DNA of 64,000 bases, taken from IMG/VR virus record IMGVR_UViG_3300017528_000567, positions 124,001 to 188,000 of that record; one strand, given 5' to 3'. The notes below the pieces were generated by a model. That model made no database searches, was not told where the DNA came from, and was given only the letters and a program-made list of their open reading frames with translations. This document shows positions 42,337 through 64,000 of the stretch, piece by piece. Positions within the stretch are counted from its first letter, which is position 1. The number at the start of each line of letters is the position of its first letter. The position numbers were made by a program, and so were the translations under genes.

Positions 42337-43773
42337 CTAAGAATCTGGATTCCAAACTGTTCTTTTTCGATATAGCCGCATTAACTCTCCTCGCCACTCG
42401 GCTGGCTCCAGGAGCTGGTGATTACCCCGTGGCTTGGACTGAGCCGGCGCTGGCGCCTGATTGGCGCGTGAACGGGGCGCCTGTTGCTCAGATACCGTCT
42501 TCTCCATGGCCGAATTGGGCGTCGGGTCTGGAAAGCCAAGCCCAAACTCTGCGCCTACAGGTGCAATCGGCATTGCTCCAGAACCAGTACTTTTACGGGG
42601 CGAGCTCGGCGCGACCGGGGGCAAAGACTCGACAGGAGCTCGCTCTGGAACGGTCTCTTGCGACGGCGGCGGCGCCACTGCAATTTGAGGTGCCTGACTA
42701 GCGAACACCACTGGCGGCGGTGCCATCTCCGGGGGCAAGTTCCTAGCGTTCTGAGAGAAAGCCAGAACGTCTAGCTCTAGAGCTAGACGGGTAACACTGC
42801 GATGCCCCAAAAACCACTTGGCGAATCTGACCACATGGTCCTGATACTTATCGTAGACCTGCTCGGCTAAGGTCTTGTCGACGTAGGCGAGATCGGCATA
42901 CCAGCCATGAGCCATCCGATAGGTGTTCATGGCTGCTTCAGCCAGACCGGCTGCAACCTCATCTGCGGGCGTCGCCTCGCACGCTTGACGAACCAAATCG
43001 ATGGCCTTGAGCGGGTTGTCGAGGCTCAGGAGGATCTGATAGTACAGGGTTACCACAGAGAGATTCAGATACTCTCTGACACTTGCTACGGTGATCGGCC
43101 CGAGCTGCGCCATCATCTCGAGATTGTTGAGCACGTTGCGGACGTGCCCCCCGGCCCGATCGATGATGATCAAGACAGCGTCATCCTCGTGCTGGACCCC
43201 CTGCTCGTTGAGCACCATCTTCATGCGGGGCAACACGTCGTCCCGCGTCACCTTCTTGATCGTGTACTCCTCACACCTTGAGCGTATCGCACCACGGATC
43301 TTTTCCGCCTCCGTGGTGCAGAGCATTGCGACCATCTTCTTTTCTTCGATGGGCTTCAACAGCACATCTTGAGCCGCGTGGTGCATACGCTGGCACTCGT
43401 CGATCAGATAGATCCGCTTCGGGGCGTTTGGGAGCATGTACGGGAGCTCCTCGACCAAGCTCCGCATGCTGTCCGTTGATCCGCTGCTTGCGGCGTCGCG
43501 CTCAGTGAACGCCTCAGACTGCTCTTGCAGGATAGCTTTGCAGCTGTCGCATGCCCCGCACGGCTCGGGGTCGGCCTTGTCCAAATCCTGGCAAAGCATC
43601 GCCATCGCGTGGATACGGCTCAGGGTCGTTTTTCCCTGGCCGTACCCACCCGCGAAGATGTAGCTAGTCTCAAACGCCGTACCCCTACTGATCCGAGTTT
43701 TGAGAAGCCGCACACTGCCGGCCTGACCCAGAACGTCCGAATACTTGCGTGGCCGATACAAAATATCCCACAC
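42337..43773 (-). CDS. dnaX: DNA polymerase III gamma/tau clamp-loader subunit
   Basis: LYRPRKYSDVLGQ, Walker A GYGQGKTT, zinc motif PCGACDSC, DAAS, IDE, IRSRC. Confidence 0.92.
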   Translation of the reverse strand: MWDILYRPRKYSDVLGQAGSVRLLKTRISRGTAFETSYIFAGGYGQGKTTLSRIHAMAMLCQDLDKADPEPCGACDSCKAILQEQSEAFTERDAASSGSTDSMRSLVEELPYMLPNAPKRIYLIDECQRMHHAAQDVLLKPIEEKKMVAMLCTTEAEKIRGAIRSRCEEYTIKKVTRDDVLPRMKMVLNEQGVQHEDDAVLIIIDRAGGHVRNVLNNLEMMAQLGPITVASVREYLNLSVVTLYYQILLSLDNPLKAIDLVRQACEATPADEVAAGLAEAAMNTYRMAHGWYADLAYVDKTLAEQVYDKYQDHVVRFAKWFLGHRSVTRLALELDVLAFSQNARNLPPEMAPPPVVFASQAPQIAVAPPPSQETVPERAPVESLPPVAPSSPRKSTGSGAMPIAPVGAEFGLGFPDPTPNSAMEKTVSEQQAPRSRANQAPAPAQSKPRGNHQLLEPAEWRGELMRLYRKRTVWNPDS

Positions 43774-43790
43774 GGTTCAATCGGCCCTTT

Positions 43791-44276
43791 CTAGGCTTGG
43801 ATCTGTGTCTGCGCAATCGTCTCCACTACCTCCTGTGCGCGAGCCTCAAGGTTCAAGCGCTGCGCGACTTCCACCATGCCGGAAAGCTCGTCCGTCCATG
43901 CGCCATGCCGGTTGAGGATCGACGTGAATTCCTTGACGTCTGCCTCACGCATCACCCACTTCATTGCGCCACTCTTCTCATCCTCGACGCCGGTGCACGA
44001 TTCGAGTAGGTGGTCTACGAGCGCATTACGCTGCCGCTCGGAGAGCTCGTTCCAGCCATCCAGCGCAACCTCCAGCAAGAAGTCCCGCTCCAATAGGAAC
44101 TCGAGTGCCCCTGATATCTTGCGGGCCTTACCGAGCACCGCCCGCCCCGCCTTCTTACCGGCCTTGTCCACGAAGATGTAGACAATGCGCGCTGTCGCGA
44201 GCTCAGGGTGATAGGTTGGGATCAAACGAAGCGCAATCTCTTCTACCGTTTCTGCTGGGCCGTATTCTCTAGCCAT
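43791..44276 (-). CDS. Putative phage metallopeptidase-family protein with degenerate HExxH
   Basis: The family-like pattern ends in ALVDHLLES where HELxH would be expected. Confidence 0.6.
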   Translation of the reverse strand: MAREYGPAETVEEIALRLIPTYHPELATARIVYIFVDKAGKKAGRAVLGKARKISGALEFLLERDFLLEVALDGWNELSERQRNALVDHLLESCTGVEDEKSGAMKWVMREADVKEFTSILNRHGAWTDELSGMVEVAQRLNLEARAQEVVETIAQTQIQA

Positions 44277-44292
44277 CTGAAGTCTCCTATTT

Positions 44293-44982
44293 TCACCCGA
44301 GGGGGTCTTTAGCTCTGGTCAGCTCTTGGATGAACGGGATGAATCGCGAGTCGCCCCATGCTTCCCACAAGTCTCCCGGGTCCTTGACGCTGCCGGGTGT
44401 TGGATACGACACGATATACACCTCGAGCTCACCACCGTGATCTCGCGCGAAGCCCGCACAACCACGGCGACCCGCCGCATCCATGTCATACCCAACCCAA
44501 ACGCGGTCAACGACTCGTTTGAGCAGCCTCGCGAACCTGGGGTTGGCCCGAGCTGTCAGCGTGGCCACCACAGGGGCAAAGGCCCGTTGGATCGGAAATA
44601 GATCGAAGGCGCCTTCAACGATGAACGCTGAACGCGTCTCGCTCATGGGTTTGGCCGCCTGACCAAGCCCAAATAGACAAGCCTCATGCAGATCAGGCAG
44701 ATAGTCCGAATACCCAGACTTCCCCCGCTCGACATTGCGAACCTGGAACCCTTTGACCTCGCCGTGTGCATTGGTCAGCGGAAACAGCAGGACGTCCTTG
44801 GTCTTACCCGCCGCCCAGGCACGGAACTCGTCCGGCACCCCCTCGGGCAACTCGTTGTCCAGATAGCCAATCCCGTATTGGGCCATCTGGGAGTCAGAAA
44901 CTCCGCGGTCAAGCAGTGCGTCTCGGACCCGGTCGTCAACCCGAGTGACCGCATAGCCGACCAAATCATCCATCCAGCTCAT
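44293..44982 (-). CDS. dnaG: DnaG-type primase catalytic core (TOPRIM) without N-terminal zinc domain
   Basis: YGIGY, LLFPLTN..GFQVR, LFGL, IVEGAFD, GYDMDAAG, KDPGD; start at 44982 overlaps the upstream stop. Confidence 0.85.
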   Translation of the reverse strand: MSWMDDLVGYAVTRVDDRVRDALLDRGVSDSQMAQYGIGYLDNELPEGVPDEFRAWAAGKTKDVLLFPLTNAHGEVKGFQVRNVERGKSGYSDYLPDLHEACLFGLGQAAKPMSETRSAFIVEGAFDLFPIQRAFAPVVATLTARANPRFARLLKRVVDRVWVGYDMDAAGRRGCAGFARDHGGELEVYIVSYPTPGSVKDPGDLWEAWGDSRFIPFIQELTRAKDPLG

Positions 44983-45512
44983 GGGGCCACTGCCACAAAG
45001 CAACGGTCCACACGATAGGCAAGCACGCCCACATAGTCCCCAACCCTGGTATGGAGCCCAGCCGCGGAGGGCTCAGCCACCAAGAGCGCGAGCCCATCGG
45101 AGAAGCCCCCGTCCAACACCCTCACGTCACCCGGGCCGCCCCCCAGCCACGGCCCGCCCACCAGGTGATAGGGCTTGACCCCGTGGTCCGACATCACGCG
45201 CAATGCCTCGCCCACGGTAGAGGCTGCAGAGCGCCAGCCGTTCACGTTTGTCCTGTCGAGCAGCACCCGATGGAACTCCTGCAAAAGCGTGCCTTCCTGT
45301 TTCACGGAACACTCCGAAAAGCCGTACCTTGCGTAGCCCGCGCTCGACACCCTGCTCTGTAAGAAGGTCCCGCGAGTCGTTGTAATCAGGAGAGGCTCAA
45401 TCGAGCGGTCCTGAACATCAACCTCGGAAGCGAGAGGCATCGAGTACCCAACTTGGCCGGCGCGCAGCCGATGCCTCTCTGTAATGAAGATCTCAGACAA
45501 TAGGGTGAGCAT
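44979..45512 (-). CDS. Hypothetical protein
   Basis: Start moved to ATG 45512, just after the upstream stop. Confidence 0.6.
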   Translation of the reverse strand: MLTLLSEIFITERHRLRAGQVGYSMPLASEVDVQDRSIEPLLITTTRGTFLQSRVSSAGYARYGFSECSVKQEGTLLQEFHRVLLDRTNVNGWRSAASTVGEALRVMSDHGVKPYHLVGGPWLGGGPGDVRVLDGGFSDGLALLVAEPSAAGLHTRVGDYVGVLAYRVDRCFVAVAP

Positions 45513-45514
45513 CT

Positions 45515-46033
45515 TCACCCCTCGGGGGGTAATAGGGCCGGGGCGGCGCGAACAAGGGGCTCTGGTCGGATTTGCAGTAGGCGAAAAAGAAGCGCCTTCC
45601 ACCATGGCAGCCTAGGGACCATCTCCGACCCAAGAGCCCACAGGAGACCGTAGACCTCTGGCAGGTTCGCGCTGACCCACTCAAGATCGCGGAGCTCCCC
45701 CTTGAACTGTTCCTCTAGCAGCGCCTTGTTAAGGACGGAGGAAAAATATGGACAACGCTTCGCATCGATCGGGTCCTCACAAATAGTCCCCGGCCACGAA
45801 GTAGGGTCCTCCGCACCCAACATACACAACCCGATCACCGGCAAGCTTTTGCCCGCGATACGGTTGTACTGCTCATTTTCCTCGCCAGCGACTTCTTTGC
45901 GGACATCCAGGGGGTGCCGGCGATTATGACGACAGAGGTGCGGGAGTCGAGCGCTAGCCTCCGCAACCCTCCGGTCAACTTCTAGAGTCAACAGGTAGCG
46001 TATTCGGTCTTGGACTTCCAGCTCGGTTCTCAT
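45515..46033 (-). CDS. Hypothetical Cys/His-containing protein
   Basis: CRHN, GLCM, TICE and RCPYF; hydrophobic/basic C-terminus. Confidence 0.65.
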   Translation of the reverse strand: MRTELEVQDRIRYLLTLEVDRRVAEASARLPHLCRHNRRHPLDVRKEVAGEENEQYNRIAGKSLPVIGLCMLGAEDPTSWPGTICEDPIDAKRCPYFSSVLNKALLEEQFKGELRDLEWVSANLPEVYGLLWALGSEMVPRLPWWKALLFRLLQIRPEPLVRAAPALLPPEG

Positions 46034-46698
46034 GACTTGCCCAACCTCTGCAGATCCACATGGGGGAGGCCCTCGGAACCGACACGCTCGGTAGCCCGAT
46101 ATGCAACGTTGGCGTGCTCCAAGAACGCAGGCTTGTGCGTGACCAAGAGAATAGAGAAGCCTGTCTTCTCGGCCAGCCCTTTCAGGAATGCCCCGGTCTG
46201 GTCAATGTAATCATCCGAGACGGCCGCCAAAGTCTCATCGAGCACGAGTAGCGGCCATTTTCCTAGGCGGGTCATGGTTAGGACTTTCAGAATCAGTGAG
46301 GCCACACTGCTCGGCCCACCCCCAAAAGCCTCCAGGGGGTGAGCTCTGATCGACACGCGCTTGTGGTCCTGCCGAAGGTAGAAATCGATGGCCACCTTGT
46401 TGTAGCGCTGCTGGACCTCTGCCTCGAACACCATCGTCTGATCGTCAAAGACTGCTCTCAGGCCCTCCGTGACCACCATTTCAATCGACCTGACATGTGC
46501 CATGACGAGCATGTCCATCAAGGACCGGAACAGCTCGCTCACCTTGGCAAGGACATCGAGCCTACGCGTGAGCTCGCCAACGTCCTTGCTCTTGGCCTCT
46601 CTGTCCTGCAGCAGTCTCCGGCGAAGCGTCTGGTGAGCGACAGCCGCTTGCCGCACTTCGATCAATCGATCCCGGGTGCGAACCTGGTCACTCGACAT
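46030..46698 (-). CDS. SbcC/Rad50 C-terminal half (ABC-ATPase)
   Basis: Signature-like FGGG, Walker B/D-loop LLVLDETLAAVS, H-loop LLVTH; short coiled coil. Confidence 0.85.
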   Translation of the reverse strand: MSSDQVRTRDRLIEVRQAAVAHQTLRRRLLQDREAKSKDVGELTRRLDVLAKVSELFRSLMDMLVMAHVRSIEMVVTEGLRAVFDDQTMVFEAEVQQRYNKVAIDFYLRQDHKRVSIRAHPLEAFGGGPSSVASLILKVLTMTRLGKWPLLVLDETLAAVSDDYIDQTGAFLKGLAEKTGFSILLVTHKPAFLEHANVAYRATERVGSEGLPHVDLQRLGKS

Positions 46699-47942
46699 TC
46701 ATACGCCCCCTTAGGTGGGTACTCCGTGTCTGCTGGCGGGTTATCGCTTAGGCCTCCGACGACCACGCCATCCTCACTCAGCAGGAAGCCATCGATCGTT
46801 CTGAACATGAAACGGTCCTTGGGCCGGCGCTCGTCAGCAGGGATCACCTTGATCCTGAACTCCACCTTGTCGCCGCGAATCCCCTCAAAAAGATGCAGCA
46901 TCTGGTTCACGTTTACGTTCATCGCCAGAGGCTCGGAGACCTTGACCTCGATCTTCTCCGTGGGCACCGGGTCAGAGGACAGCGTGTTGCTCTCCTCCGC
47001 ACTCGATAACCTGATGACCCCCGTAGCTGGATCAAAATGCATGCGGATCTTCGTCTTGGTCTTGTCCTTGTCCTTCGCCAAGCTGTCTCGCATGTACTTG
47101 AGCTGCGACCCGATCTGGTCACGGGCAACCCGGACGACCACCTCATCGGTCTTGGCGTAGTAGCTGAATTTCTTGTACTCGATCGTGTGCCGTGGCCAAC
47201 CGAGCACGTCGCCCCGCCCATTGATCATGTAGACCTTGGTGTCGGTCTGGTACGTCGAGACGTTCCCCGTGGAGCGGCCCAAGAAGGACTCGATCAAGCC
47301 CAGGTGCTGGGCTGGCAAGGACAGGTCCTTGTCCATGAAGGCCGGGCACTGCACGTAACAGATCTCTTTGCTGTTGGACGCGAGCATGTAGCCGTTCGCC
47401 CGTGCGAGCTCGGGGTCAGCGTTGCCAAAGATTCGAATCGTTTTGAAAACGTCCTGGTCAAGCACGTCCCCTGACTTAGGCAAAAAAGACTTTGCCAACC
47501 CGAGCCCGAACTGAAGGATCTTGATCGAGAACTCCTTCGGAGGCACCGACTCCTGCGCAGCGGCGATATCCCTCTCGAACATGTGGGTGCTTCGTGGGTC
47601 AAACGAGACCCGCTCATTAGAGCCCGACTCGCCGAACGTGTACTTGACCTTGCAAGCACCGTTCTCTTCAGTGGCCTTGAAGTTGATCGACCCAGAGATA
47701 TGACCCAACCCCTTGATGGCCTCAGAGGGTAGGATGAAGGCACCTTCGCCAGTTACATCAAAGATCGGGAATGACGAGCGCGCCTCGTGCTTGCCATCTC
47801 GCGAGTACACATCGCAGGTGTCCCGACGAACCATCATGAGATACCCGCCGCCCGTCTGCGGGGTGACTTGGGGGGCAACGATTGAGGCGATCCCGATCGC
47901 CCGGTTCAGAGCCGATGCGTCAACTGTGAATGTGATTTCCAT
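46662..47942 (-). CDS. dnaN: DNA polymerase III beta sliding clamp (divergent)
   Basis: N-terminus MEITFTVDASALNRAI..DVYSRDG..EGAFILP follows the DnaN pattern; late segment AMNVNVNQMLHLF..VEF; clamp-loader genes nearby. Confidence 0.65.
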   Translation of the reverse strand: MEITFTVDASALNRAIGIASIVAPQVTPQTGGGYLMMVRRDTCDVYSRDGKHEARSSFPIFDVTGEGAFILPSEAIKGLGHISGSINFKATEENGACKVKYTFGESGSNERVSFDPRSTHMFERDIAAAQESVPPKEFSIKILQFGLGLAKSFLPKSGDVLDQDVFKTIRIFGNADPELARANGYMLASNSKEICYVQCPAFMDKDLSLPAQHLGLIESFLGRSTGNVSTYQTDTKVYMINGRGDVLGWPRHTIEYKKFSYYAKTDEVVVRVARDQIGSQLKYMRDSLAKDKDKTKTKIRMHFDPATGVIRLSSAEESNTLSSDPVPTEKIEVKVSEPLAMNVNVNQMLHLFEGIRGDKVEFRIKVIPADERRPKDRFMFRTIDGFLLSEDGVVVGGLSDNPPADTEYPPKGAYECRVTRFAPGID

Positions 47943-48243: not shown

Positions 48244-49140
48244 TCAAAAGCTGACGTCGCCCTCCTCTACACCGCGCTTTCGATCCGCTGTTCGCTGGGC
48301 CTTGAACTCATCCGACTGCACCTTCTTGCCCTCTTTGCACTGAGACAAAAACTTGCAAAACTTGCACATAAAGCCCGGCGTAGGAGGGAACAGCTGGAAG
48401 GGGTCAGCGCCTTGCTCGATCCGCTTGATAGCCACCCCCACCTCTTCCAGCGCCCCCACAACCGCGCCCCGCAGGTCTCTTAAGTCTTGAGTAGTCGGGG
48501 TGCTCCAATCCATGCTCTCAGCCGGTTCGGACCGCCAATAGAGAAACCCGACCTTGTCTGGGATGACTCCGTGCTTCATCTCGTAAAGCATCGAGTACCA
48601 TCGAAGCTGCCGATGATTCGTATAGGTGTCGCGGTACCTCGACCCCTTGCCGTCGACCAACACCAGGTCTTTGGTCTGAACCCGAGTCATCACAAAGTCG
48701 GCACGACCGCCGATACGATGCCCACCAAAGTCAACGTCCAGATTCAACTCTGCCTTGGCATCTAGGCCAATCAGACCATGCTGCCGTATGCTGCTCAACC
48801 CCCGAGGGATCGTAGTACGGACCTCGGAGATCACCTCATCTAGAGACTTGGTCCCCTCCTTCAGCGATGGGTCCTTCCAATTGAAGACCCCGCCCTTTTC
48901 GGTCTCCTTGGTAAGGATGCGCTCGATGGTCGGCGTAACCAACGCTTGAAGCCTCGCGGTAGTGTTCGACCGCCAGATCTCATCCCTATAGAAGGCCTCG
49001 AAGATCTTGCCTACAGCATCGCCGTAGAGCATGTTGACCCGGTTCTCTGGTTCCTCGAGCCGGACCTTGGCGATGTAGCCCAGGTAGTATGATTTGCGGC
49101 ACGACGCCAAAATGTCGTAGCCAGAATATGAAATATACAT
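48244..49140 (-). CDS. Cas4/RecB-like PD-(D/E)XK nuclease with probable Fe-S cluster
   Basis: GRADF, LVDGK, QLRWY; one N-terminal Cys plus a C-terminal CKFC..C. Confidence 0.85.
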   Translation of the reverse strand: MYISYSGYDILASCRKSYYLGYIAKVRLEEPENRVNMLYGDAVGKIFEAFYRDEIWRSNTTARLQALVTPTIERILTKETEKGGVFNWKDPSLKEGTKSLDEVISEVRTTIPRGLSSIRQHGLIGLDAKAELNLDVDFGGHRIGGRADFVMTRVQTKDLVLVDGKGSRYRDTYTNHRQLRWYSMLYEMKHGVIPDKVGFLYWRSEPAESMDWSTPTTQDLRDLRGAVVGALEEVGVAIKRIEQGADPFQLFPPTPGFMCKFCKFLSQCKEGKKVQSDEFKAQRTADRKRGVEEGDVSF

Positions 49141-50114
49141 CAGCCGCCCCTCGGTTGAGCCAGGTACTTGAGCGCGAGCTCACGGACATCGGCCGCGAAG
49201 TCCATGGCCTCGATGTTCGATTCAATAGTCTTCGTGGGGTCGAAACTGGCGTCTGCCTGCAACAGTTGAACGAACGCGTCGATACTGCGGGCTTCAGCCT
49301 CACCCCGCTCTTTACGCTCCATGTCAAACACATCGGCAGCCGGAGCCACCACCAGCGGGTGTTCGGTCGTCTGAATCAGTGACGGCGAGAACTCCACCAA
49401 CGAAACCTTGGGAGCTCGCTCAGTGTTCTCTCTAGTGAGAGCGCCGCGCGACACGGCCCCCTGGTTCACGAAGCGTTTGCCGGCGAGCTCAACGATCCCT
49501 TGATCTCGGTGCCAGTGACCGAACATCCAAACATCCGGCCCGTCCGGCGTCGCCAGGTCGGCATATCGAAACACCGGCTCCCCGAAAAAGTCCTCTACTT
49601 TAGAGGGTGGGTTCTCACTTGCCAGGGCGTGCACTACGGCCACTAGGAAGTCGTCACCGGGTTTCTTCTGAATCGCGAGCAGATCAGCGAGTGACCTCCG
49701 CGGGTCATAGGGCACCCCGACCACCCGAACACGCAAGCCGCCATCCTCGAACACGGCCTCCCGCAAGTGGCGGAACACGCCGCAGCTGTACAGGACCCCG
49801 AGGGGCTGATGCTCGATGCTGGCCAGATTGTTGTACTCGAGATCGTGGTTGCCCTCGACACAGAACACGGGGCAGGGGTAGCCCTTGTGGAGCTCCGCCG
49901 TTTGGCGGATGGCCCCGTGGCTCGTTCGTCGCGCCGTCTTGATGTGAAAATAGTCGCCCCCATCAAGGACGGCAGTTGCGTCTCGCGCCTTGGCGAGCTG
50001 CCCGATCTGTTCAAGGTTGGACCAAATCTCAGCCGGGTAGTCGCCCTTCCACGATGCCGGGCTCTTGTCCGCGACGTGAGTATCAGTGCGGAAAACCAGA
50101 GCTACTCTAGGCAT
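49140..50114 (-). CDS. sbcD: SbcD/Mre11 metallophosphoesterase nuclease
   Basis: TDTH, GGDYFH, GNHD, HAL and GHWH motifs. Confidence 0.9.
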   Translation of the reverse strand: MPRVALVFRTDTHVADKSPASWKGDYPAEIWSNLEQIGQLAKARDATAVLDGGDYFHIKTARRTSHGAIRQTAELHKGYPCPVFCVEGNHDLEYNNLASIEHQPLGVLYSCGVFRHLREAVFEDGGLRVRVVGVPYDPRRSLADLLAIQKKPGDDFLVAVVHALASENPPSKVEDFFGEPVFRYADLATPDGPDVWMFGHWHRDQGIVELAGKRFVNQGAVSRGALTRENTERAPKVSLVEFSPSLIQTTEHPLVVAPAADVFDMERKERGEAEARSIDAFVQLLQADASFDPTKTIESNIEAMDFAADVRELALKYLAQPRGG

Positions 50115-53272: not shown

Positions 53273-53319
53273 GATGAATGCGGGTCGAGAGCCGCAGCCC
53301 TCGACCCGCACCCCTCCCT

Positions 53320-55203: not shown

Positions 55204-55842
55204 ATGGAGTCTGAGAGTCGCGTGCTACGGCGGTTTAAGCGTGCCCAAGAGGAAGCGCTGGAAGAACTCGCCGACCACGTAGCAGACGAATTTCTGCAGG
55301 AGCTGAGTGGCTTGGGCATCTTCAGTGAGGACCGGGTTTCCACGGCACTCACTGTGAAGGGGCTCACCGCCGACAGCCTCAACTCCATCTCCGAGGGAAA
55401 GACCGCTGGCCCCGTGATCAAAGCTCTAGGAGGGCTCGTTCTACGCGGGGTCTGGTACGCCCTAAGCCACCCGTTCGTCATTCTCGGAAAGCTCATCAGC
55501 TCCGGGAAGTTCCGTGCAGAGATCAAGGGGGCCTTCAAGAAGGCACTCCACAGAGACCTCCGAGCAACGCGCCATCTTGGAAGCGTGGCCAGCCGCTGGG
55601 CGAACGGCGAAGCGATTCACCCCGAAGAGTTCAAGGCTGCCAAGCAACACCTGCTACGCATCCTCATCAAGATTGTGTTGATCTATTTTGCCGGCCCGGG
55701 GGTCGCCGGGGTCTTCTCGGGCGGAATTTGGAAAGCGGTCAGTGCCATAGGGTTCTCCGCTGAAGAAATCATCCTATTGCTGCTCGAGCGCCCTCTAAGT
55801 GCCGCCATGAAAAAGCTCATGAGCGGTCCCACTGCCGCCTAG
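55204..55842 (+). CDS. Lone plus-strand gene: RVLRRF-tagged protein with hydrophobic C-terminal helices
   Basis: Fills the gap between two minus-strand genes; begins MESESRVLRRFKRA; contains KTAG; hydrophobic LLRILIKIVLIYFAGPGVAGVFSGG. Confidence 0.7.
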   Translation: MESESRVLRRFKRAQEEALEELADHVADEFLQELSGLGIFSEDRVSTALTVKGLTADSLNSISEGKTAGPVIKALGGLVLRGVWYALSHPFVILGKLISSGKFRAEIKGAFKKALHRDLRATRHLGSVASRWANGEAIHPEEFKAAKQHLLRILIKIVLIYFAGPGVAGVFSGGIWKAVSAIGFSAEEIILLLLERPLSAAMKKLMSGPTAA

Positions 55843-58016: not shown

Positions 58017-59935
58017 GAGACCCCGATGACTTTGAGCAGCTCATCCTCAGACACGCAGTTCGTGCCGTTCTTCCTAGCCGCTTGAGCCTTCGAGCTGGTT
58101 GAGCTCGGATCAGCCATCACGAGGTACGTGAGTTTCTTCCCAACCGATGTCTTGACCTCACCGCCAGCCTGCTTGACCAGGTTCTCGAGCTCCGCGCGAG
58201 GCCTCGCCAAGCTGCCGGTGAAGCACACGCTCATGCCGGACAGCGTGCCGTGCCGCTTGCCTTCAATCTCCACACCGAGGAGCAGGAGCTTGTCGATCAG
58301 CCAGGCATGATTGGCCAACCAGCCGTGAATGTTGCGTGCCCGCACCGGGCCTAACCCCTCCACAGACATGAGCTGCTCGACCGTGATGGACTTGAAGCGC
58401 GCCAAGGTGTCGAAGCCGGCGTCCATGGCCAGCTTGATGCAGCTCGGGCCGCAGAGCGGGATAGAGAGCGAGCCCAGCAGTGTATCGAGCGGCACCTTGC
58501 GCTTGGCCCAGAGGGTCTTGATGACCTTCGCCGCAGATTTCGGCCCCATCCTATCCACGTCGGCAAGCTGCGCCTCCGACAGCTTGTAGAGGTCACCGAC
58601 GTCAGCTACGAGCTCCATCTCCACAAGCTTCTCGATCAGCGTCTCGCCCCACTCCTTGATGTCGAGCACCGAGACGTAACGCTTGATGCGCCCGACCGCC
58701 TGAGCAGAGCACTCCATCGAGTTCGTGCAGATCAGGTATTCGCCGTCCATCTGCGTTGCGCCCTCGCAGCACGGACAGGTCAGCGGAGGAGCGGCCACGG
58801 TGCCAGTCGGCTTGCGTACAGCGGCGACCCTCGGGATCACATCCTGTGCACGAGCGATCAGGATCGTGGCCCCGATGTCTATCCCGAGGGTGTTGATGTA
58901 CGCGACGTTGTACAGCGAAGCGTTCGTGATCTCCGTGCCCAGCACACGCACGGGATCGAATATAGCAACGGGCGTGATGCGACCAGACCCACCAACCTGC
59001 CAATCGATGCGCCGCAACGTTGACTCGCGAGTCATGGGGGCAAACTTGAAAGCGACCGCGCCTTTCGGTCGATTGTCCACCTCACCCAGAGCGAGCTGAT
59101 TCGCCAAGTCGTTGACGCGCACCACAAGGCCGTCGATCTCGTAGTTCAGCTCGGCGCGCTTGAACTGCTGATATTCCAACCACAGATCGTGAGGCGTTCG
59201 GATCCCCGGCGTCATGGCCGTGACATACCAGTTCGGCACCTTGAGCCCCTGCTGCACAAGCCACGTGAACTGGTCGCCCTCCGACTCGAAGTCTTCCCCA
59301 TCGGCGACCTGGTAGAACATGATCGTCAGGTGCTCGCACCCGTGGCCATCGTAACGCTTGGCGATACCACTCGCGGCGTTACGAGGGTTTGCGTATTGCG
59401 GAAAATGCGCGGCGTGATCGCTCTTCGTGAGCACGATCTCGCCGCGAAGCGTGCCGGTGAATGCCTTGGGCAAGCGACCAGGAACGCCTTGCATCCTGGC
59501 AACATTCGCAGATATGTCTTCGCCAGTAACGCCATCACCTCGAGTGGCGGCGCGGGAAAATGTCCCCTTCACGTAGTCGACAGCGATCGAGATGCCGTCG
59601 AGTTTCTCAGTCACCAGAAGCGCCGCGAATTTCGAGCTACCCGTGGACATCACCCACGAAGTCAGCTCTTCCAAGGTGTTGATCTTGCTCAACGAGCCCA
59701 TGGCGATCGTGTGCGAGACCTTGGTCCACTCGGAAACTGGCGCTGCACCGACCTGAGTGACCGCGGCGCTATCGTGCTTCAGAGCTGAGAGCTCATCCAC
59801 CCACGCGTCGTAGGCCTCGTCGACGATCGTCGGCGTGCTGTTGTAGTACGCGTGTCGAGCTTGCTGGATGAGCCCCTCCAGTTCGATGATTCGATTTGAA
59901 GTGGCCTCATCCAACAGTTCCGGGAAATCTTCCAT
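58013..59935 (-). CDS. ligA: NAD-dependent DNA ligase
   Basis: EKLDG, TRGDG, RGE, NPRNAASG, EIDGLV, AFKF, zinc finger, HhH and C-terminal BRCT (CFTGSL). Confidence 0.96.
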   Translation of the reverse strand: MEDFPELLDEATSNRIIELEGLIQQARHAYYNSTPTIVDEAYDAWVDELSALKHDSAAVTQVGAAPVSEWTKVSHTIAMGSLSKINTLEELTSWVMSTGSSKFAALLVTEKLDGISIAVDYVKGTFSRAATRGDGVTGEDISANVARMQGVPGRLPKAFTGTLRGEIVLTKSDHAAHFPQYANPRNAASGIAKRYDGHGCEHLTIMFYQVADGEDFESEGDQFTWLVQQGLKVPNWYVTAMTPGIRTPHDLWLEYQQFKRAELNYEIDGLVVRVNDLANQLALGEVDNRPKGAVAFKFAPMTRESTLRRIDWQVGGSGRITPVAIFDPVRVLGTEITNASLYNVAYINTLGIDIGATILIARAQDVIPRVAAVRKPTGTVAAPPLTCPCCEGATQMDGEYLICTNSMECSAQAVGRIKRYVSVLDIKEWGETLIEKLVEMELVADVGDLYKLSEAQLADVDRMGPKSAAKVIKTLWAKRKVPLDTLLGSLSIPLCGPSCIKLAMDAGFDTLARFKSITVEQLMSVEGLGPVRARNIHGWLANHAWLIDKLLLLGVEIEGKRHGTLSGMSVCFTGSLARPRAELENLVKQAGGEVKTSVGKKLTYLVMADPSSTSSKAQAARKNGTNCVSEDELLKVIGVS

Positions 59936-59943
59936 CCCGGGAG

Positions 59944-59950
59944 CTACACC
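59944..59950 (-). promoter_or_regulatory. GGTGTAG element 8 nt upstream of the ligA ATG
   Basis: GGTGTAG-CTCCCGGG-ATG. Confidence 0.55.
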
Positions 59951-59955
59951 AAACG

Positions 59956-60174: not shown

Positions 60175-60185
60175 TGGAACCCCCT

Positions 60186-62489
60186 TCACACGATCTGGCA
60201 GAACCCGCCCGCACAAGCGGCCTCAGCGGAAAGCACGGTCCCATCTTCAGTCTCGAGTATCGCTGTGTAATCGATGGGCTTGTAGCAAGAGACGAGCTCG
60301 AGCCACCGCCGCTCGTCAGCCTCCGTTGTCACGGCTTCCAGTGGAGCGAACGCGTAATCTTTGTCTGCCGACGCCGGCAGCAACGAGATGCCCGTGAAGT
60401 CATCGCGGTGCGCCCAAATGTAGCTCGCCACGGCCTCCCACTCGTCGGGCTGAACCGTGACGGTATTCGACACATTGTGATGCCCGCCGTTGTATCCGGG
60501 GTGCATGCGGTCGGTCCCCGGGACAACCCAGTTGACTTGCGTGGACCGCACAGCATCCAAGAACTGCATCGCCGTCTGATCACCCTTGAGGATCGCCCCG
60601 TCCGGCGCCTGCACGGGGAACTCAACGACCCATTTGCCGTCTGGCTTTCGCTGGCACATTTTCGGATTCGCCGCCATGAACGCCTGAAAGACCGGCTCCA
60701 GCTCATCCGCTGTGACGCGGCGAATGTACCGGCGTGCATGGTGCGGGTGGATCCCGGAGCCAATGCACCCGAGGGCCAGTGACGTAGTTCCCGACGGTTT
60801 CACGCACGTCGTACGCGCCGCCGAGTTGATGCCCAGGCGAGCCGCATACTCCCGGTTCCACTCCTTCACCTTCACGGCGACCTGGCGCTGGTACTCTGCG
60901 TTGAGAGCAATCTGCGGGGCGTCCATGATGCCAGTCATGCCGATGCCCAGCAGGGCGTCGCGTTTGGCGATCTCCGACGACGCCCAGCCCAAGTACGGCA
61001 TATCCGTGTAGGCGGCCTGCACGGTCCCGATGAGCGTCGCGGCTTTGGCAGCCTCGACGAAGTCCTCGTAGCTGGTGAGCTTGGATGCATTGATCTCGCA
61101 CAGATTGCAGAACGCCCAGCCCGTGTGACGGCTGTCCGCCTCGACCGAGATGCCACGGGTAGCGAGTCGCGCCTGAATCTCCGGGGTCACCGTTACAACG
61201 GGGTACAGGTTGATCTCGCAGCACGGATTAGTCGCGTGATCGTAGTCGCTGACGAAAAAGAATCCCGGCTCACCCCACTCGCGCGTCATCTGAAAAATGC
61301 GCTTGAATTGCTTCTTCTTTACCTCATCGCGCTTCAGCACGACGGAATTGTTCGAATTGGCGAACCAAGGATCGGTCTGCCACCAGTTGCCCGTTTTGGC
61401 GAACATCATCTCGCTGTCTTCAAGCGAGAAAAGGCAGATCATCGCGCTTCTCCGGATGCCGCCAGACAGCACAGCATCAGCAGCGAAGCACATGATGCGA
61501 TACGCCTCAATCGGACGGAGCTTGCGACCCTGCGCAGCCAAGAGGGTGGCGCGCACCCGCTCCAACGACTCTTTCAGCTTCAAATGACCCGGAGCTCGAC
61601 CGCCGGAAGTCTTCAGCGGAGAACCAGCGGGCCGGACCTTGTGATAGCTCAGCTCGAGATTGGTCCCTTTTTGAAAGCTGTTGATCAGCGCCTTGAGCGC
61701 GTCAGCCCAGCCTTCAATCGTATCCTGCACCACGTGATGCTGGACCCTCTTCGGATCGATATGCGCCACCGGGGAGAGCCGCTCCACGTGATCGAACTGC
61801 ACGGAGAATCCAACGCCGCAACCTGACAGCAGCAGATACAGCGACTCACTGAATGCTTCCCAACGATCGACATGAGTCGCAGAGCAATTGTAGAGTCGAT
61901 TGTGATTCGCGAGGATCGCCGGACCGCCGAACTGCATCGAGCGCATCGAAGGCAAGACACGCTTGCTGTAGACGAGCTTGAACGCTTCACGGATCTCATC
62001 CGCCATGCCGGGGAACCGACCCAAGTGCATCCCCTCTACGCGGGCGACGGTCTCTTCATACACTTCACGGCGCAGCAACTCAGGCAGATAGCGTGCGTAC
62101 TTGCTCGCGTGGATGTAATCAGAGAGCCCCTTCGGATCGATCGCTTTCTCATGCAGCTGCCGCATCTCCTGACGGTGATGCCGATACAAGATGTAAGCTT
62201 TGGCGACCTTGTACTGATGGAGCCGCATCAACGCGATCTCCACAGCATTCTGAATCAGCTCAACGTCAACCACGTCACCCGGCAGCGAGAGCACCACTGT
62301 GGTGACCACCTCGTTGATGGCCTTATCGTCGGCAGCTCCTACGCTATCTACCCACGCGGCGTAGATAGCATTGCGCAGCTTCAAAGGATCGAAGGGCTGG
62401 ACAGTGACACCATCTCGCTTGCGGATCGAGCTCGGCTGGTGACTGTAGCTGACATGAGAGCCGTTGTGGACTTGAGGTTGGGCCTGCAT
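60186..62489 (-). CDS. nrdJ: Class II (adenosylcobalamin-dependent) ribonucleotide reductase with N-terminal ATP cone
   Basis: RKRDG..FD ATP-cone start, LYNCS, GCGVGFS, GGIRRSA, GEPGF, NPCCEI, CNLCEIN, TCVKPSGT, C-terminal ACAGGFC. Confidence 0.9.
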   Translation of the reverse strand: MQAQPQVHNGSHVSYSHQPSSIRKRDGVTVQPFDPLKLRNAIYAAWVDSVGAADDKAINEVVTTVVLSLPGDVVDVELIQNAVEIALMRLHQYKVAKAYILYRHHRQEMRQLHEKAIDPKGLSDYIHASKYARYLPELLRREVYEETVARVEGMHLGRFPGMADEIREAFKLVYSKRVLPSMRSMQFGGPAILANHNRLYNCSATHVDRWEAFSESLYLLLSGCGVGFSVQFDHVERLSPVAHIDPKRVQHHVVQDTIEGWADALKALINSFQKGTNLELSYHKVRPAGSPLKTSGGRAPGHLKLKESLERVRATLLAAQGRKLRPIEAYRIMCFAADAVLSGGIRRSAMICLFSLEDSEMMFAKTGNWWQTDPWFANSNNSVVLKRDEVKKKQFKRIFQMTREWGEPGFFFVSDYDHATNPCCEINLYPVVTVTPEIQARLATRGISVEADSRHTGWAFCNLCEINASKLTSYEDFVEAAKAATLIGTVQAAYTDMPYLGWASSEIAKRDALLGIGMTGIMDAPQIALNAEYQRQVAVKVKEWNREYAARLGINSAARTTCVKPSGTTSLALGCIGSGIHPHHARRYIRRVTADELEPVFQAFMAANPKMCQRKPDGKWVVEFPVQAPDGAILKGDQTAMQFLDAVRSTQVNWVVPGTDRMHPGYNGGHHNVSNTVTVQPDEWEAVASYIWAHRDDFTGISLLPASADKDYAFAPLEAVTTEADERRWLELVSCYKPIDYTAILETEDGTVLSAEAACAGGFCQIV

Positions 62490-62512
62490 GATTACCTAAG
62501 ATCTCCTTGTTT

Positions 62513-63475
62513 TCATTGTGCCATCGATAGGATGACCATCTCGATCATCGTTCGCTTGAATGGGGAAGACGACTTCACATCAACATCTAATTTGCTGAGC
62601 TGTCCCATGTAGCGAACGAGTGACCGCAGCTCATGTTTGCGGGCCGTAGGCGCTACGGCATTATTGAAGCGCCAGAGATTCTGGCCGAGAAGTCCCGCCA
62701 CATCCGCCGCTGACATCCCTTTGTCAAACATGCTGCGGACCACGGTTGTGTTTTCGACGTGCTTCATCAGCTGATAGACCACGGCGCCGTACTGGGTTTC
62801 GCCCGACTTGGCGCAGACTGCTCCAAACAGCTGCAAAGCGCGTTTGACGTCCTTTGCCATCACCGCCTCAGCCACGAGGCTGGGCTCCGCCTCGGGGGCC
62901 TGCGTAGCAATCTGAGCTACATGTGCTTCTGTGATCTCGCCGACACTCCCGGCATAGATCGCAAGCTTTTTGATCTCATTGGCGAGCCGATACAGGTCAG
63001 GGCCTGTTGATTGGTACAGCAACTCCACCGCTCGCTTTCGAATCGCGACGCCATTACGTGTCGCCTCCTTGCTGATGAAGTCGGTGTGATATGCCTCCTT
63101 GTCCCAAGGCTTGCACTTTTTCCATTCCAGAGACTTGCCCTTGCTGGCAACAAACGACCACAGCTCCGACAAGCTCTCAGACCTAACGATGGCCGCCAGT
63201 ATCACCGATTGATCAACAGGGTTGCGCCTCTCGACATAGCGCCGCAGTTCCTTGTTCCCCTTCAGCTCTTGAGCATTGTCTAACACAATGGTCCTGGGGT
63301 CCTCCGAGCTAGCTTCGCAGAGCTCAACGAGCTCAATGTCAGTGAGCCCGTCGCCGTCCAACAAGAGCACGCGGCGACGACTCTGCCTGGTCTGTTCAAT
63401 GTAACGGTCGAGGTAAAAAGGCTCACCGCCATATGCGACGTAGAACGCGTTGAATGTGGATCCCTTGCCAGCCAC
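62513..63475 (-). CDS. holA: DNA polymerase III delta subunit
   Basis: YVAYGGEPFYL, LYRLANEIKKL, C-terminal LDVDVKS..MIEMVI. Confidence 0.8.
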   Translation of the reverse strand: MAGKGSTFNAFYVAYGGEPFYLDRYIEQTRQSRRRVLLLDGDGLTDIELVELCEASSEDPRTIVLDNAQELKGNKELRRYVERRNPVDQSVILAAIVRSESLSELWSFVASKGKSLEWKKCKPWDKEAYHTDFISKEATRNGVAIRKRAVELLYQSTGPDLYRLANEIKKLAIYAGSVGEITEAHVAQIATQAPEAEPSLVAEAVMAKDVKRALQLFGAVCAKSGETQYGAVVYQLMKHVENTTVVRSMFDKGMSAADVAGLLGQNLWRFNNAVAPTARKHELRSLVRYMGQLSKLDVDVKSSSPFKRTMIEMVILSMAQ

Positions 63476-63488
63476 ACATCACCCCGCC

Positions 63489-64000
63489 TTAGACGAACGA
63501 TTCTGCGAGCACGGTCTTGAACTGGAAGGACAGATTGACGCTGACCTTGTTGGCGGTGTCTCGCAATGCCCCGACCTTCCGAGCAAGTTTGACCCACGCC
63601 GCCATTGGCACTTTCGCGCCCAGGGCAACGAGTGTATCGGTCACATCCACGTTGGTAGCCCGCAGAGGGTCGAGCCCGCAGATGAGCACGTCGTGAATGA
63701 CCTGCTCCATGAACTGCGCGGCTAATTCCAGGTCCTTCTTCATGGCATCTACCAAAGAAAACACTGCCCAGAGGTCTTTCTCCACGCTCGCGTGGAGGGC
63801 CTTCACGACCTGGTCTCGTAGGACTAACCTACTAGCGTTACAGTAGTCGATCGCTCTACCGGCCGATCCGTCACCCATTCGGCTATAGACAAGTGCTTTA
63901 GTAGGGTCCTCTTCGGACCGCTGAACTATCGATAGGATGAAGTCATCCGGCAAGCGGCGGTATGTGACTACCCCACAACGCGAACGAATCGTCAGCGGCA
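63489..64000 (-). CDS. holB: DNA polymerase III delta-prime subunit, C-terminal part (truncated by the window edge)
   Basis: The frame stays open to the edge and reads PLTIRSRC; GSAGRA motif and collar helices ending NLSFQFKTVL. Confidence 0.75.
   Translation of the reverse strand, partial: PLTIRSRCGVVTYRRLPDDFILSIVQRSEEDPTKALVYSRMGDGSAGRAIDYCNASRLVLRDQVVKALHASVEKDLWAVFSLVDAMKKDLELAAQFMEQVIHDVLICGLDPLRATNVDVTDTLVALGAKVPMAAWVKLARKVGALRDTANKVSVNLSFQFKTVLAESFV

What the first reader, a model, noticed from the sequence alone, without database searches (positions are those of the whole stretch)
42337..64000. Phage carrying a complete bacterial-type clamp and clamp-loader set with cellular-style repair genes
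Seen: DnaX, HolA, HolB and a DnaN-like clamp, together with DnaG core, LigA, RecA, RuvC, RecD2 and SbcCD. Established: T4-like phages use their own gp44/62/45 system, and a full gamma-delta-delta-prime loader is a cellular feature. Inference: a largely host-independent Pol III-type replisome; a DnaE and a helicase should lie outside the window.
Basis: partly seen in the sequence, partly recalled or inferred. Interest (0 to 1): 0.6.

Follow-up and report, generated by a model that had tools for sequence, protein, structure and literature searches.

The report
Huge phage with full bacterial clamp loader

Summary
The gene calls hold. On the minus strand lie a DnaX-type ATPase (42337-43773), a HolA-type delta (62513-63475), a HolB-type delta-prime (63489 to 436 nt past the window end) and a 426-aa protein (46662-47942). 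That protein has no Pfam match but folds at high confidence as a three-domain bacterial beta clamp. LigA, RecA, RuvC-like, RecD2, an SbcD-like nuclease and a Toprim protein are also there.

The window is part of a phage: terminase, portal and head protease lie in it. It belongs to a 433,843-bp metagenome contig.

The Pol III inference fails. No DnaE is found in the 255-kb record, in a complete 447,761-bp relative with terminal repeats, or in two other relatives. All carry a roughly 950-1020-aa family A polymerase, and this record also carries a DnaB-type helicase.

The three loader subunits plus the clamp are conserved across this clade. Five cultured jumbo phages with a DnaX-like gene have only that one subunit. 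In a tree, the phage DnaX and HolB each sit on a long stem among their bacterial orthologues, with no supported bacterial sister, so they are not recent captures.

Best reading: a phage-owned gamma3-delta-delta-prime loader and beta ring that probably serve the family A polymerase. That last link is inferred, and the one docking test gave no answer.

The parts
42337..43773 (-). DnaX-type (gamma/tau-like) clamp-loader ATPase, 478 aa. Walker A, a Cys zinc module, Walker B DE and the SRC motif are intact. A Pro-rich linker (about aa 345-450) is followed by a short C-terminal helix-like segment.
   Evidence: PF13177 1.8e-25; TIGR02397 184 bits; motifs read from the sequence and invariant in 4 clade members; falls on the bacterial DnaX side of the tree.
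46662..47942 (-). Highly divergent three-domain beta sliding clamp (DnaN fold), 426 aa, pI 6.2.
   Evidence: AF2 pLDDT 92.1, pTM 0.88. All listed Foldseek PDB matches are bacterial DnaN, E about 5e-18, TM 0.67/0.77, about 12% identity. The family profile hits T. maritima DnaN domain I, E 4.5e-5. phrog_947 over aa 1-96. Family of 44 homologues, none with a Pfam domain.
62513..63475 (-). HolA-type delta subunit (the 'wrench'), 320 aa, with no nucleotide-binding motifs.
   Evidence: TIGR01128 120 bits, above the 80 cut-off; PF21694; profile vs PDB finds B. subtilis delta 3zh9 at 3.6e-22 and E. coli delta at 5e-9; AF2 plus Foldseek top hits are delta chains.
63489..64000 (-). C-terminal 170 codons of the HolB-type delta-prime subunit. 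The full gene is 315 aa and runs 436 nt past the window end. Its P-loop is degenerate, Walker B reads DGAD (no catalytic Glu), and the SRC arginine finger is kept.
   Evidence: PF13177 2.8e-33; TIGR00678 holB is the best model at 129 bits; top PDB hit is E. coli delta-prime 1a5t, 3e-17; motifs; groups with bacterial HolB, split support 99.
40603..42309 (-). 5'-3' exonuclease (FEN / Pol I N-terminal type), 568 aa, with an unassigned 270-aa N-terminal extension. Likely removes primers.
   Evidence: PF02739 8e-23 and PF01367 6e-14.
44293..45003 (-). Toprim protein resembling the DnaG catalytic core, 236 aa (229 aa as called by JGI). Possibly one half of a split primase.
   Evidence: PF13155 1.3e-6; TIGR01391 positions 202-353, E 5e-13. 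A separate DnaG-type Zn-ribbon protein lies beside the DnaB gene, outside the window.
58013..59935 (-). NAD-dependent DNA ligase (LigA) with OB, HhH and BRCT domains.
   Evidence: PF01653 1.4e-41, PF03120, PF00533.
51348..52616 (-). RecA recombinase.
   Evidence: PF00154 9.7e-44.
52631..53323 (-). RuvC-like Holliday junction resolvase.
   Evidence: phrog_159 1.6e-13.
55839..58016 (-). RecD2-type SF1 helicase.
   Evidence: PF13604, PF14490, PF18335, PF23139, PF13538.
49140..50114 (-). SbcD/Mre11-like metallophosphoesterase.
   Evidence: PF00149 6.6e-13.
50107..51345 (-). N-terminal (Walker A) half of an SbcC/Rad50-like ATPase, 412 aa.
   Evidence: AAA_23/AAA_15/AAA_29 over aa 3-50; SMC_N positions 4-49.
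46030..46698 (-). 222-aa ATPase matching the C-terminal half of an SMC/Rad50 head. Overlaps the clamp gene's 3' end by 37 nt.
   Evidence: PF02463 positions 110-213, E 0.0011; phrog_15167 5e-20.
48244..49140 (-). PD-(D/E)XK nuclease.
   Evidence: PF12705 6.9e-17.
60186..62489 (-). Class II (B12-dependent) ribonucleotide reductase with an ATP-cone.
   Evidence: TIGR02505 5.8e-69; PF03477.

Best explanation
The window is the replication-recombination module of a huge tailed phage (parent contig 433,843 bp). The phage encodes its own processivity system of bacterial ancestry: a ring-type beta clamp, very diverged in sequence, and a three-part loader.

By analogy with the E. coli gamma complex, three copies of the active DnaX ATPase would assemble with one delta and one delta-prime into a pentamer. 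Delta is the clamp-opening wrench. Delta-prime is an inactive stator that still supplies an arginine finger. The pentamer would load the phage clamp onto primed DNA.

The polymerase it serves is most likely the phage's own family A enzyme (984 aa, with a 3'-5' exonuclease domain, a Pro-rich linker and a conserved roughly 75-aa C-terminal domain). This polymerase would work with a DnaB-type helicase, a DnaG-type primase that may be split in two, a separate FEN and LigA. The result is a hybrid replisome: Pol III-style accessory factors around a Pol I-family catalytic core.

Shown: the identity of the four accessory proteins, their catalytic-motif status, their conservation as a set across the clade, the absence of DnaE and the presence of PolA. 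Inferred: the 3:1:1 stoichiometry, that the loader acts on the phage clamp, and that PolA is the clamp's main client.
For: - Identity of the parts.
- DnaX has intact Walker A/B, zinc module and SRC. HolB has a degenerate P-loop, no Walker B Glu and an invariant SRC.
- The set is conserved. DnaX-like, HolB-like and HolA-like genes occur in G002, G003 and G004, with the same adjacent HolA/HolB pair. LR745208.1 has a DnaX-like gene, a HolA-like gene and a weak second PF13177 hit beside it. Clamp homologues are in G002-G004 and LR745208.1. Clamp and HolA families share parent contigs of 433,843, 195,771, 150,561, 43,432, 40,799 and 329,533 bp.
- The clamp family's pI is about 6, the range that PMC3201878 links with ring clamps that need loaders.
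- No PF07733 or PolB in G000. PolA and DnaB are present. PolA without DnaE in the complete G003, in G004 and in LR745208.1.
- The PolA + polIII-beta + polIII-gamma combination is already reported for phages RSL1 and Ma-LMM01 (PMC3201878).
Against: - No direct evidence that PolA binds the clamp. No canonical QL[SD]LF motif was found. The one docking test (clamp against PolA residues 900-984) gave no answer.
- The clamp and DnaX genes sit among recombination and repair genes, about 130 kb from PolA and DnaB in the record. The clamp could mainly serve repair, recombination-dependent synthesis or Okazaki-fragment maturation.
- 171 kb of the parent contig is unseen, so a DnaE there cannot be strictly excluded.
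- DnaX and HolB score below NCBIfam's equivalog cut-offs.
Confidence: 0.65

Rival explanations
1. One reading: the clamp and loader serve a phage-encoded Pol III alpha (DnaE or PolC) that lies outside the window, giving a true Pol III-type replisome.
For: All four accessory proteins are of the Pol III holoenzyme type. 171 kb of the parent contig could not be searched. Iyer et al. 2021 (PMC7824862) report both host-like and minimal split Pol III alpha versions in other jumbo phage groups.
Against: PF07733 gives no candidate in the 255-kb record, the complete 447,761-bp relative G003, G001, G002 or LR745208.1. The only hit, in G004, is not significant (E 0.04 for the protein alone), and its G000 homologue has no Pfam match. 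Every sufficiently long relative has a large PolA.
Confidence: 0.07
2. The clamp and loader are mainly a repair and recombination platform. The ring would organise LigA, FEN, the nucleases and recombination-dependent DNA synthesis, rather than acting as the processivity factor of the replicative polymerase.
For: Gene neighbourhood: the clamp lies between PD-(D/E)XK/SbcD/RecA and an SMC-like ATPase. DnaX lies next to FEN. HolA and HolB lie next to RNR and LigA. PolA, DnaB and the Zn-ribbon primase are about 130 kb away. Bacterial beta clamps bind ligase (PDB 5frq is listed).
Against: The two roles do not exclude each other. Genomes of this size would be expected to need a processive replicase, and PMC3201878 finds that clamps and loaders track genome size. 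No second polymerase was found.
Confidence: 0.2
3. The genes are host DNA, either recently captured or bacterial sequence within a mis-called 'provirus' record, and not a long-standing phage system.
For: IMG/VR labels the record 'provirus' with CheckV completeness 54%. JGI's automatic names call the HolA homologues 'DNA polymerase III delta subunit'.
Against: - GC is uniform at about 0.585 and nearly all genes share one strand across 255 kb.
- TerL, portal and protease lie 9-20 kb away on the same strand.
- Beyond the 'provirus' cut the contig continues with ORFans.
- A relative has direct terminal repeats.
- No close DnaX relative was found in 185,579 species genomes.
- The best bacterial HolB matches are 25-38% identical and spread over many phyla.
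- Phage DnaX and HolB clades sit on stems of 2.6 and 2.1 substitutions per site.
- The clamp is about 12% identical to any solved DnaN.
Confidence: 0.03
4. Some of the loader subunits act on the host's beta clamp, for example a delta-like protein that strips host clamps to shut down host replication, rather than forming a cognate loader for the phage clamp.
For: From general knowledge, E. coli delta alone can open and unload beta. Phages are known to target the host clamp (PDB 7evp, the Gp168-beta-clamp complex, is listed).
Against: The phage carries its own clamp, and clamp, delta, delta-prime and DnaX are co-conserved across distant clade members. Delta-prime keeps the SRC finger expected of a working pentamer.
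Confidence: 0.05

Closest known systems
E. coli / B. subtilis Pol III clamp loader (gamma/tau3-delta-delta-prime) with beta clamp (PDB 1jr3, 3glf, 8giy; delta 3zh9; delta-prime 1a5t)
   Same: The same three subunit types with the same division of labour as read from the motifs: an active DnaX, a motif-less delta, and an inactive delta-prime that keeps SRC. The clamp is a three-domain beta clamp.
   Different: - Encoded by a phage.
- The clamp is about 12% identical and about 55 aa longer.
- DnaX lacks recognisable tau domains IV-V and has no canonical frameshift site.
- chi and psi were not looked for.
- The partner polymerase is family A, not Pol III alpha.
Ralstonia phage RSL1 and Microcystis phage Ma-LMM01 (Kazlauskas & Venclovas 2011, PMC3201878)
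   Same: Large phages that combine a family A polymerase with a polIII-beta homologue and a polIII-gamma homologue.
   Different: Only the gamma subunit was found in those phages, and the authors left open how the loader is completed. This clade encodes delta and delta-prime as well. Neither phage was searched here, although a DnaX match in Ma-LMM01 (AB231700.1) appeared.
Cultured jumbo phages with one DnaX-like gene (PaBG, Lu11, Yoloswag, HRDY3, Tunturi_5; subgroup 3.1 of Iyer et al. 2021, PMC7824862)
   Same: A DnaX-like clamp-loader gene next to SbcC-like genes and metallopeptidase genes. According to PMC7824862, subgroup 3.1 jumbo phages have a T7-like PolA and part of them a DnaB; this was not checked here for these five phages.
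   Different: Each has one PF13177 gene and no separate holA-type gene. This clamp family's profile detects no member in them.
T4 gp44/gp62 loader with gp45 clamp
   Same: A phage-encoded clamp and pentameric AAA+ loader serving the phage's own polymerase.
   Different: The T4 system is of the RFC/PCNA type, with a two-domain trimeric clamp and a family B polymerase (PMC4889955). The system here is of the bacterial beta/gamma type. T4 loader chains are only distant fold matches (rank 45).

Membership tests
DnaN / beta sliding clamp | Three tandem clamp-fold domains in one chain of about 370 aa | tested here: met
   AF2 model pLDDT 92.1. All listed Foldseek PDB matches are DnaN, aligned over about 440 columns, TM 0.67 by query and 0.77 by target.
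DnaN / beta sliding clamp | Sequence match to the Pfam DnaN domain models (PF00712 tested in the genome; PF02767 and PF02768 covered by the Pfam scan of the protein) | tested here: not met
   No Pfam or NCBIfam match. There is only profile-level similarity to domain I: phrog_947 at 5e-6 and T. maritima DnaN at 4.5e-5. It is therefore a homologue by fold, outside the current sequence family models.
DnaN / beta sliding clamp | Head-to-tail dimer forming a closed ring; hydrophobic partner-binding pocket between domains II and III | not tested
   No dimer model was made. The acidic to neutral pI (6.2; family median 6.0) fits ring clamps that need loaders, according to PMC3201878.
DnaX (gamma/tau) | AAA+ module with Walker A, zinc module, Walker B DExx, sensor 1 and SRC | tested here: met
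   All are present and invariant in 4 clade members. PF13177 1.8e-25. Falls on the DnaX side of the tree.
DnaX (gamma/tau) | Reaches the NCBIfam equivalog score (TIGR02397, 250 bits) | tested here: not met
   184 bits: a divergent member.
DnaX (gamma/tau) | tau-specific C-terminal domains that bind DnaB and the polymerase; gamma made by frameshift or slippage | tested here: inconclusive
   Beyond the AAA+ modules there is a Pro-rich linker and a short C-terminal segment, but no recognisable tau domains. There is no A AAA AAG site and no homopolymer run.
HolA (delta) | Full-length match to the holA equivalog model above its cut-off | tested here: met
   TIGR01128 120.4 bits against a cut-off of 80, model positions 1-316. 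The relatives G003, G004 and G002 are also above the cut-off.
HolA (delta) | Three-domain delta fold without nucleotide-binding motifs | tested here: met
   The profile hits B. subtilis delta 3zh9 at 3.6e-22 over the full length. Foldseek's top hit is 3zh9 at 3.5e-16, followed by E. coli delta chains. No P-loop in the sequence.
HolA (delta) | Domain I element that binds and opens the clamp | not tested
HolB (delta-prime) | AAA+ fold with inactive ATP site but retained SRC arginine finger | tested here: met
   The P-loop varies (GVGKR, GTGRK, GVGRK, GTGRR). Walker B reads DGAD, DGVD or DGAN, without Glu. RSRC is invariant.
HolB (delta-prime) | Orthology to bacterial holB rather than a phage duplicate of dnaX | tested here: met
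   The best NCBIfam model is holB, at 129 bits against 99 for dnaX. The top PDB hit is E. coli delta-prime. In the tree it lies on the bacterial HolB side of a branch with SH-aLRT 99 (quick search, long branches present).
HolB (delta-prime) | Reaches the NCBIfam score for TIGR00678 (180.6 bits) | tested here: not met
   129 bits: a divergent member.
   No PF07733 in G000, G001, G002, G003 (complete) or LR745208.1, and only a non-significant hit in G004. A family A polymerase is present instead. 171 kb of the parent contig is unseen.

The most novel reading that the evidence does not exclude
A family A DNA polymerase is the clamp-dependent replicase of a whole clade of roughly 400-500-kb phages. 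It would be organised like a Pol III holoenzyme. A phage-owned gamma3-delta-delta-prime loader would load a beta ring that has drifted beyond sequence recognition. The Pro-rich tail of DnaX would act as a tau-like tether. The polymerase would be recruited through its conserved C-terminal domain or through a non-canonical acidic-hydrophobic terminal motif that it shares with the phage LigA.
Probability: 0.4. Interest if true: 0.7.

Novelty: new variant of a known kind. Interest (0 to 1): 0.5.

Why it matters
Earlier surveys of phage replication genes found only the gamma-type subunit of the bacterial loader in phages. They left open how such loaders are completed, by borrowing host delta and delta-prime or by some phage-specific subunit (PMC3201878; PMC4889955). 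In this clade the phage supplies delta and delta-prime itself.

The clamp, which jumbo-phage surveys reported as undetected for PolA phages with a loader (PMC7824862), is present but recognisable only by fold.

The set offers a compact and evolutionarily distant bacterial-type clamp and loader for comparison. It is also a candidate natural case of a Pol I-family enzyme used as a clamp-tethered replicase. Finally, the 44-member clamp family gives annotators a seed for a new profile.

Tried and rejected
- **Docking.** Complex prediction with the clamp (alignment A1) against PolA residues 900-984 (alignment A5) gave 'no answer', ipSAE 0.00 in both runs, and the controls were not run. This is no evidence either way.
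- **Clamp by sequence.** Pfam, NCBIfam, phmmer against PDB and tblastn against 50,697 phage records all came back blank for the clamp. Only the fold and the family profile worked.
- **Parent contig.** The 433,843-bp parent contig is not held and could not be searched. One step showed ORFans and a Topo IB-like gene beyond the record's start. A first look-up failed because my start codon differed from the called gene.
- **Cryptic DnaE.** A weak PF07733 hit in G004 is not significant, and its G000 homologue has no Pfam match.
- **Clamp-binding motif.** No canonical motif of the QL[SD]LF type was found in PolA, LigA, FEN, DnaX, HolA or HolB.
- **dnaX frameshift.** No canonical slippery site was found.
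- **HolA against phage records.** tblastn found only 2 weak hits, which look like bacterial DNA within 'phage' records. It missed the HolA of LR745208.1 that the HMM finds, so tblastn absence is weak evidence.
- **Literature.** Six searches found no paper describing delta or delta-prime homologues in phages. The library lacks most subscription-journal papers, so this is not proof that none has been reported.
- **The search for related loci with A1** failed for lack of a conserved stretch. A narrower alignment worked.

Full report
**Where the window lies.** The window is bases 124,001-188,000 of a 255,478-bp IMG/VR record that is labelled 'provirus', with CheckV completeness 54%. GC is a uniform 0.585 or so, and nearly all genes are on the minus strand. 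The record equals bases 178,366-433,843 of JGI contig Ga0187305_1079523 (433,843 bp). I derived this from the position of the clamp gene.

Beyond the record's left end, the contig continues with small ORFs that have no family match and a 1,192-aa protein with a Topoisom_I hit. This looks like more phage, not a host chromosome, so the 'provirus' cut is probably an artefact. The window itself holds a large terminase (31647-33734), a portal (27543-29318) and a head maturation protease (21818-23383). It is a phage.

**Checking the observation.** All named genes are on the minus strand.

- DnaX-like (42337-43773, 478 aa) matches PF13177 at 1.8e-25 and TIGR02397 at 184 bits, below the 250 cut-off.
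- HolA-like (62513-63475, 320 aa) matches PF21694, and matches TIGR01128 over its full length at 120 bits, above the 80 cut-off. A profile of 32 family members hits B. subtilis delta (3zh9) at 3.6e-22 over the full length and E. coli delta at 5e-9. An AF2 model (pLDDT 88.3) has 3zh9 and the E. coli delta chains as its best Foldseek matches.
- HolB-like is cut by the window end. The window holds only the last 170 codons (63489-64000). The whole gene is 315 aa. Its best NCBIfam model is holB (129 bits, against 99 for dnaX, both below their cut-offs), and its top PDB match is E. coli delta-prime.
- The clamp (46662-47942, 426 aa) has no Pfam, NCBIfam, PDB-sequence or phage tblastn match. It has only a PHROG 'processivity factor' hit over residues 1-96. 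With an alignment of 34 homologues, AF2 gives pLDDT 92.1 and pTM 0.88. Every listed Foldseek PDB match is a bacterial DnaN, with E about 5e-18, TM 0.67/0.77 and about 12% identity. The family profile also reaches T. maritima DnaN at 4.5e-5, over domain I only.
- LigA, RecA, RecD2, RuvC-like and SbcD-like are clear matches.
- The 'DnaG core' is a short Toprim protein.
- 'SbcC' is present only as two separate halves of an SMC/Rad50-type head.

**Motifs.**

- DnaX has Walker A (GxGKTT), a Cys-x2-Cys-x2-Cys zinc module, Walker B (DE) and SRC. All are invariant in four clade members. After the AAA+ modules comes a Pro-rich linker of about 100 aa and then a short C-terminal segment. No canonical frameshift heptamer or homopolymer run is present.
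- HolB has a drifting P-loop (GVGKR, GTGRK, GVGRK, GTGRR), a Walker B without the catalytic Glu (DGAD, DGVD, DGAN) and an invariant RSRC. This is the delta-prime pattern: an inactive stator that still supplies an arginine finger.
- HolA has no nucleotide-binding motifs.

**The polymerase is not Pol III.** PF07733 (the Pol III alpha core) finds no candidate in the 255-kb record. It also finds nothing in G003, a 447,761-bp relative with direct terminal repeats that is rated 100% complete, nor in G001, G002 or the 485-kb LR745208.1. G004 (407 kb) gives one sub-threshold hit, which is not significant for the protein alone (E 0.04). Its G000 homologue has no Pfam match. There is no family B polymerase either.

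Instead, the record has a 984-aa family A polymerase at record bases 34,520-37,474. It also has a DnaB-type helicase of 493 aa and a DnaG-type Zn-ribbon protein next to it. G001, G003, G004 and LR745208.1 all carry the same kind of PolA. The word search returns at least 374 relatives of this PolA. The 120 best listed are at least 47% identical and lie on contigs of up to 659 kb.

The PolA has a DxE exonuclease motif in a region read as its 3'-5' exonuclease domain (residues about 110-330), with the polymerase domain at 380-768. After these come a moderately conserved stretch, a Pro-rich linker and a conserved C-terminal domain of about 75 aa. Near-invariant residues there are L913, Q920, G934, L937, D941, L965 and L970. 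The 5'-3' exonuclease is a separate gene next to dnaX.

**Conservation of the set.** G002, G003 and G004 each have a DnaX-like gene (466-491 aa) and an adjacent pair of HolA-like and HolB-like genes, as here. LR745208.1 has a DnaX-like gene (interrupted), a HolA-like gene at 75 bits and a weak second PF13177 hit beside it. The clamp family has members in G002, G003 and G004 (56, 31 and 25% identity) and in LR745208.1. The clamp family (44 proteins) and the HolA family (30 proteins) are listed with the same parent contig lengths several times.

By contrast, five cultured jumbo phages that have a DnaX-like gene each have exactly one PF13177 gene. These are Tunturi_5, HRDY3, Lu11, PaBG and Yoloswag. 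Their only hit to the holA model is a weak cross-hit on that same gene, and the clamp profile finds nothing in them.

**Age of the genes.** Peptide patterns specific to the clade's DnaX find no relative in 185,579 species genomes. With the HolB alignment, at least 593 bacterial genes match. The best 80 are 25-38% identical and are spread over Acidobacteriota, Desulfobacterota, Planctomycetota, Bacteroidota, Bacillota, Chloroflexota, Pseudomonadota and others.

I built a tree of 85 rows with a quick IQ-TREE search under LG+C20 PMSF. Three loci without a clean ORF were left out, and long branches were flagged. The tree splits at SH-aLRT 99 into a HolB side and a DnaX side. The four phage HolB form one clade (support 100, stem 2.1) on the HolB side. 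The four phage DnaX form one clade (support 100, stem 2.63) on the DnaX side. Neither has a supported bacterial sister.

So delta-prime is an orthologue of bacterial delta-prime, not a phage-internal copy of DnaX, and neither gene is a recent capture. The tree is unrooted and the search was quick.

**How it probably works.** By analogy with the solved E. coli complex, three DnaX, one delta and one delta-prime would form the pentamer that opens and loads the phage beta ring at primer ends. This is inference from motif status and co-conservation; I could not model the pentamer within the size limit.

I take the PolA as the clamp's main client for four reasons:
- it is the only polymerase found;
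- PMC3201878 found that clamps and loaders become more frequent as viral genome size grows;
- the same PolA + beta + gamma combination was described for RSL1 and Ma-LMM01 in that paper;
- the PolA has an unusual conserved C-terminal appendage on a flexible linker.

This link is not shown. No canonical clamp-binding motif is present. My one docking job (clamp against PolA 900-984) returned 'no answer', and I do not count it either way.

The gene neighbourhood (RecA, SbcCD-like, PD-(D/E)XK, RuvC-like, RecD2, FEN, LigA) makes a role in recombination-dependent synthesis, repair and Okazaki maturation at least as well supported as a pure fork role. The two roles do not exclude each other.

**Comparison with what is known.** Kazlauskas & Venclovas 2011 found only polIII-gamma homologues in phages. 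They asked whether such phages borrow host subunits or use an unknown phage subunit (PMC3201878). [quoted passage not shown] Iyer et al. [quoted passage not shown] The 2020 huge-phage paper uses the clamp-loader gene only as a marker (PMC7162821).

I found no paper that reports delta and delta-prime homologues in phages. The library is incomplete, and JGI's pipeline already auto-names some of these proteins 'DNA polymerase III delta subunit'. I therefore rate this as a new variant of a known kind: the known PolA/beta/gamma phage replicase, here with a complete loader and a clamp visible only by fold.

**Limits.**
- 171 kb of the parent contig was not seen.
- The host is unknown.
- The stoichiometry, ring formation and all protein contacts are inferred.
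- Two of the three loader subunits fall below NCBIfam's equivalog cut-offs.
- Absence of delta and delta-prime from other phages rests on five cultured genomes plus an insensitive tblastn.

Noticed in passing
Whole record; L043:1-7039 (parent contig bases 171,327-178,365): The IMG/VR 'provirus' record is the right-hand 255 kb of a 433,843-bp contig. The cut-off part continues with ORFans and a 1,192-aa protein with a eukaryotic-type Topoisom_I (PF01028) hit. The provirus boundary therefore looks like an artefact, and the phage is probably about 430-450 kb.
   Followed up: partly
window 50107-51345 (-) and 46030-46698 (-): An SbcC/Rad50-like ATPase seems to be split. The 412-aa protein matches SMC_N positions 4-49 (Walker A end). 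A 222-aa protein, 3.4 kb downstream and overlapping the clamp gene's end by 37 nt, matches positions 110-213 (signature and Walker B end).
   Followed up: partly
window 44293-45003 (-); record bases 37,859-38,494 (L004:674-1309, -): The DnaG-type primase may be split. A Toprim-only protein lies in the window. A separate CHC2 Zn-ribbon protein (PF01807, 1.9e-6) lies next to the DnaB-type helicase, about 130 kb away.
   Followed up: partly
window 53320-54231 (-) and 54396-55148 (-): Two unassigned proteins near RecA give weak language-model and structure leads. One points to T4 gp32-type SSB (score 0.86; TM 0.47) and the other to UvsY (0.86). If real, a T4-style recombination mediator set sits beside bacterial-style RecA. 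These are leads only.
   Followed up: partly
record bases 34,520-37,474 (PolA N-terminus); window 58013-59935 (LigA N-terminus); window 34799-36796; window 54396-55148 (C-terminus): An acidic-hydrophobic motif of the form [DE][LFIMW]x[DEA][LFIM][LFIM] occurs 9 times in the genome. Three occurrences lie in the first 25 residues of proteins (PolA, LigA and a 665-aa unknown), and one lies in the last 25 residues of the UvsY-like protein. I defined the pattern after seeing it, so the enrichment is biased. It is a candidate non-canonical clamp-binding motif.
   Followed up: partly
LR745208.1 (W01) 285,077-288,784 and 421,674-422,654; PolA family members P0065, P0083, P0133, P0164: In relatives, the PolA and DnaX genes are interrupted. 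One example is a 1,763-aa frame with three separated PF00476 pieces. Several PolA homologues of 1,300-1,400 aa carry PF14528 (LAGLIDADG-type). Both suggest inteins in the replication genes of this clade.
   Followed up: no
window 40603-42309 (-): The FEN-type 5'-3' exonuclease has an unassigned 270-aa N-terminal extension with a weak KOW motif (E 0.004). In Tunturi_5, the gene next to the clamp loader is annotated 'transcription antiterminator'.
   Followed up: no
window 39955-40581 (-): A 208-aa protein with sigma-70 region 4 (PF04545, 3.4e-15) lies between the replication module and the structural genes. It is a likely phage sigma factor or a regulator resembling an anti-sigma factor.
   Followed up: no
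record bases 234,497-235,477 (L125:5498-6478, -): An MT-A70 family adenine methyltransferase (PF05063, 1.2e-19) is encoded elsewhere in the record.
   Followed up: no
window 43791-44276 (-): A 'phage metallopeptidase' (PF18894, 2e-26) sits between the Toprim gene and dnaX. Metallopeptidase genes also lie just upstream of the DnaX-like gene in PaBG and HRDY3, so this neighbourhood may be conserved.
   Followed up: no
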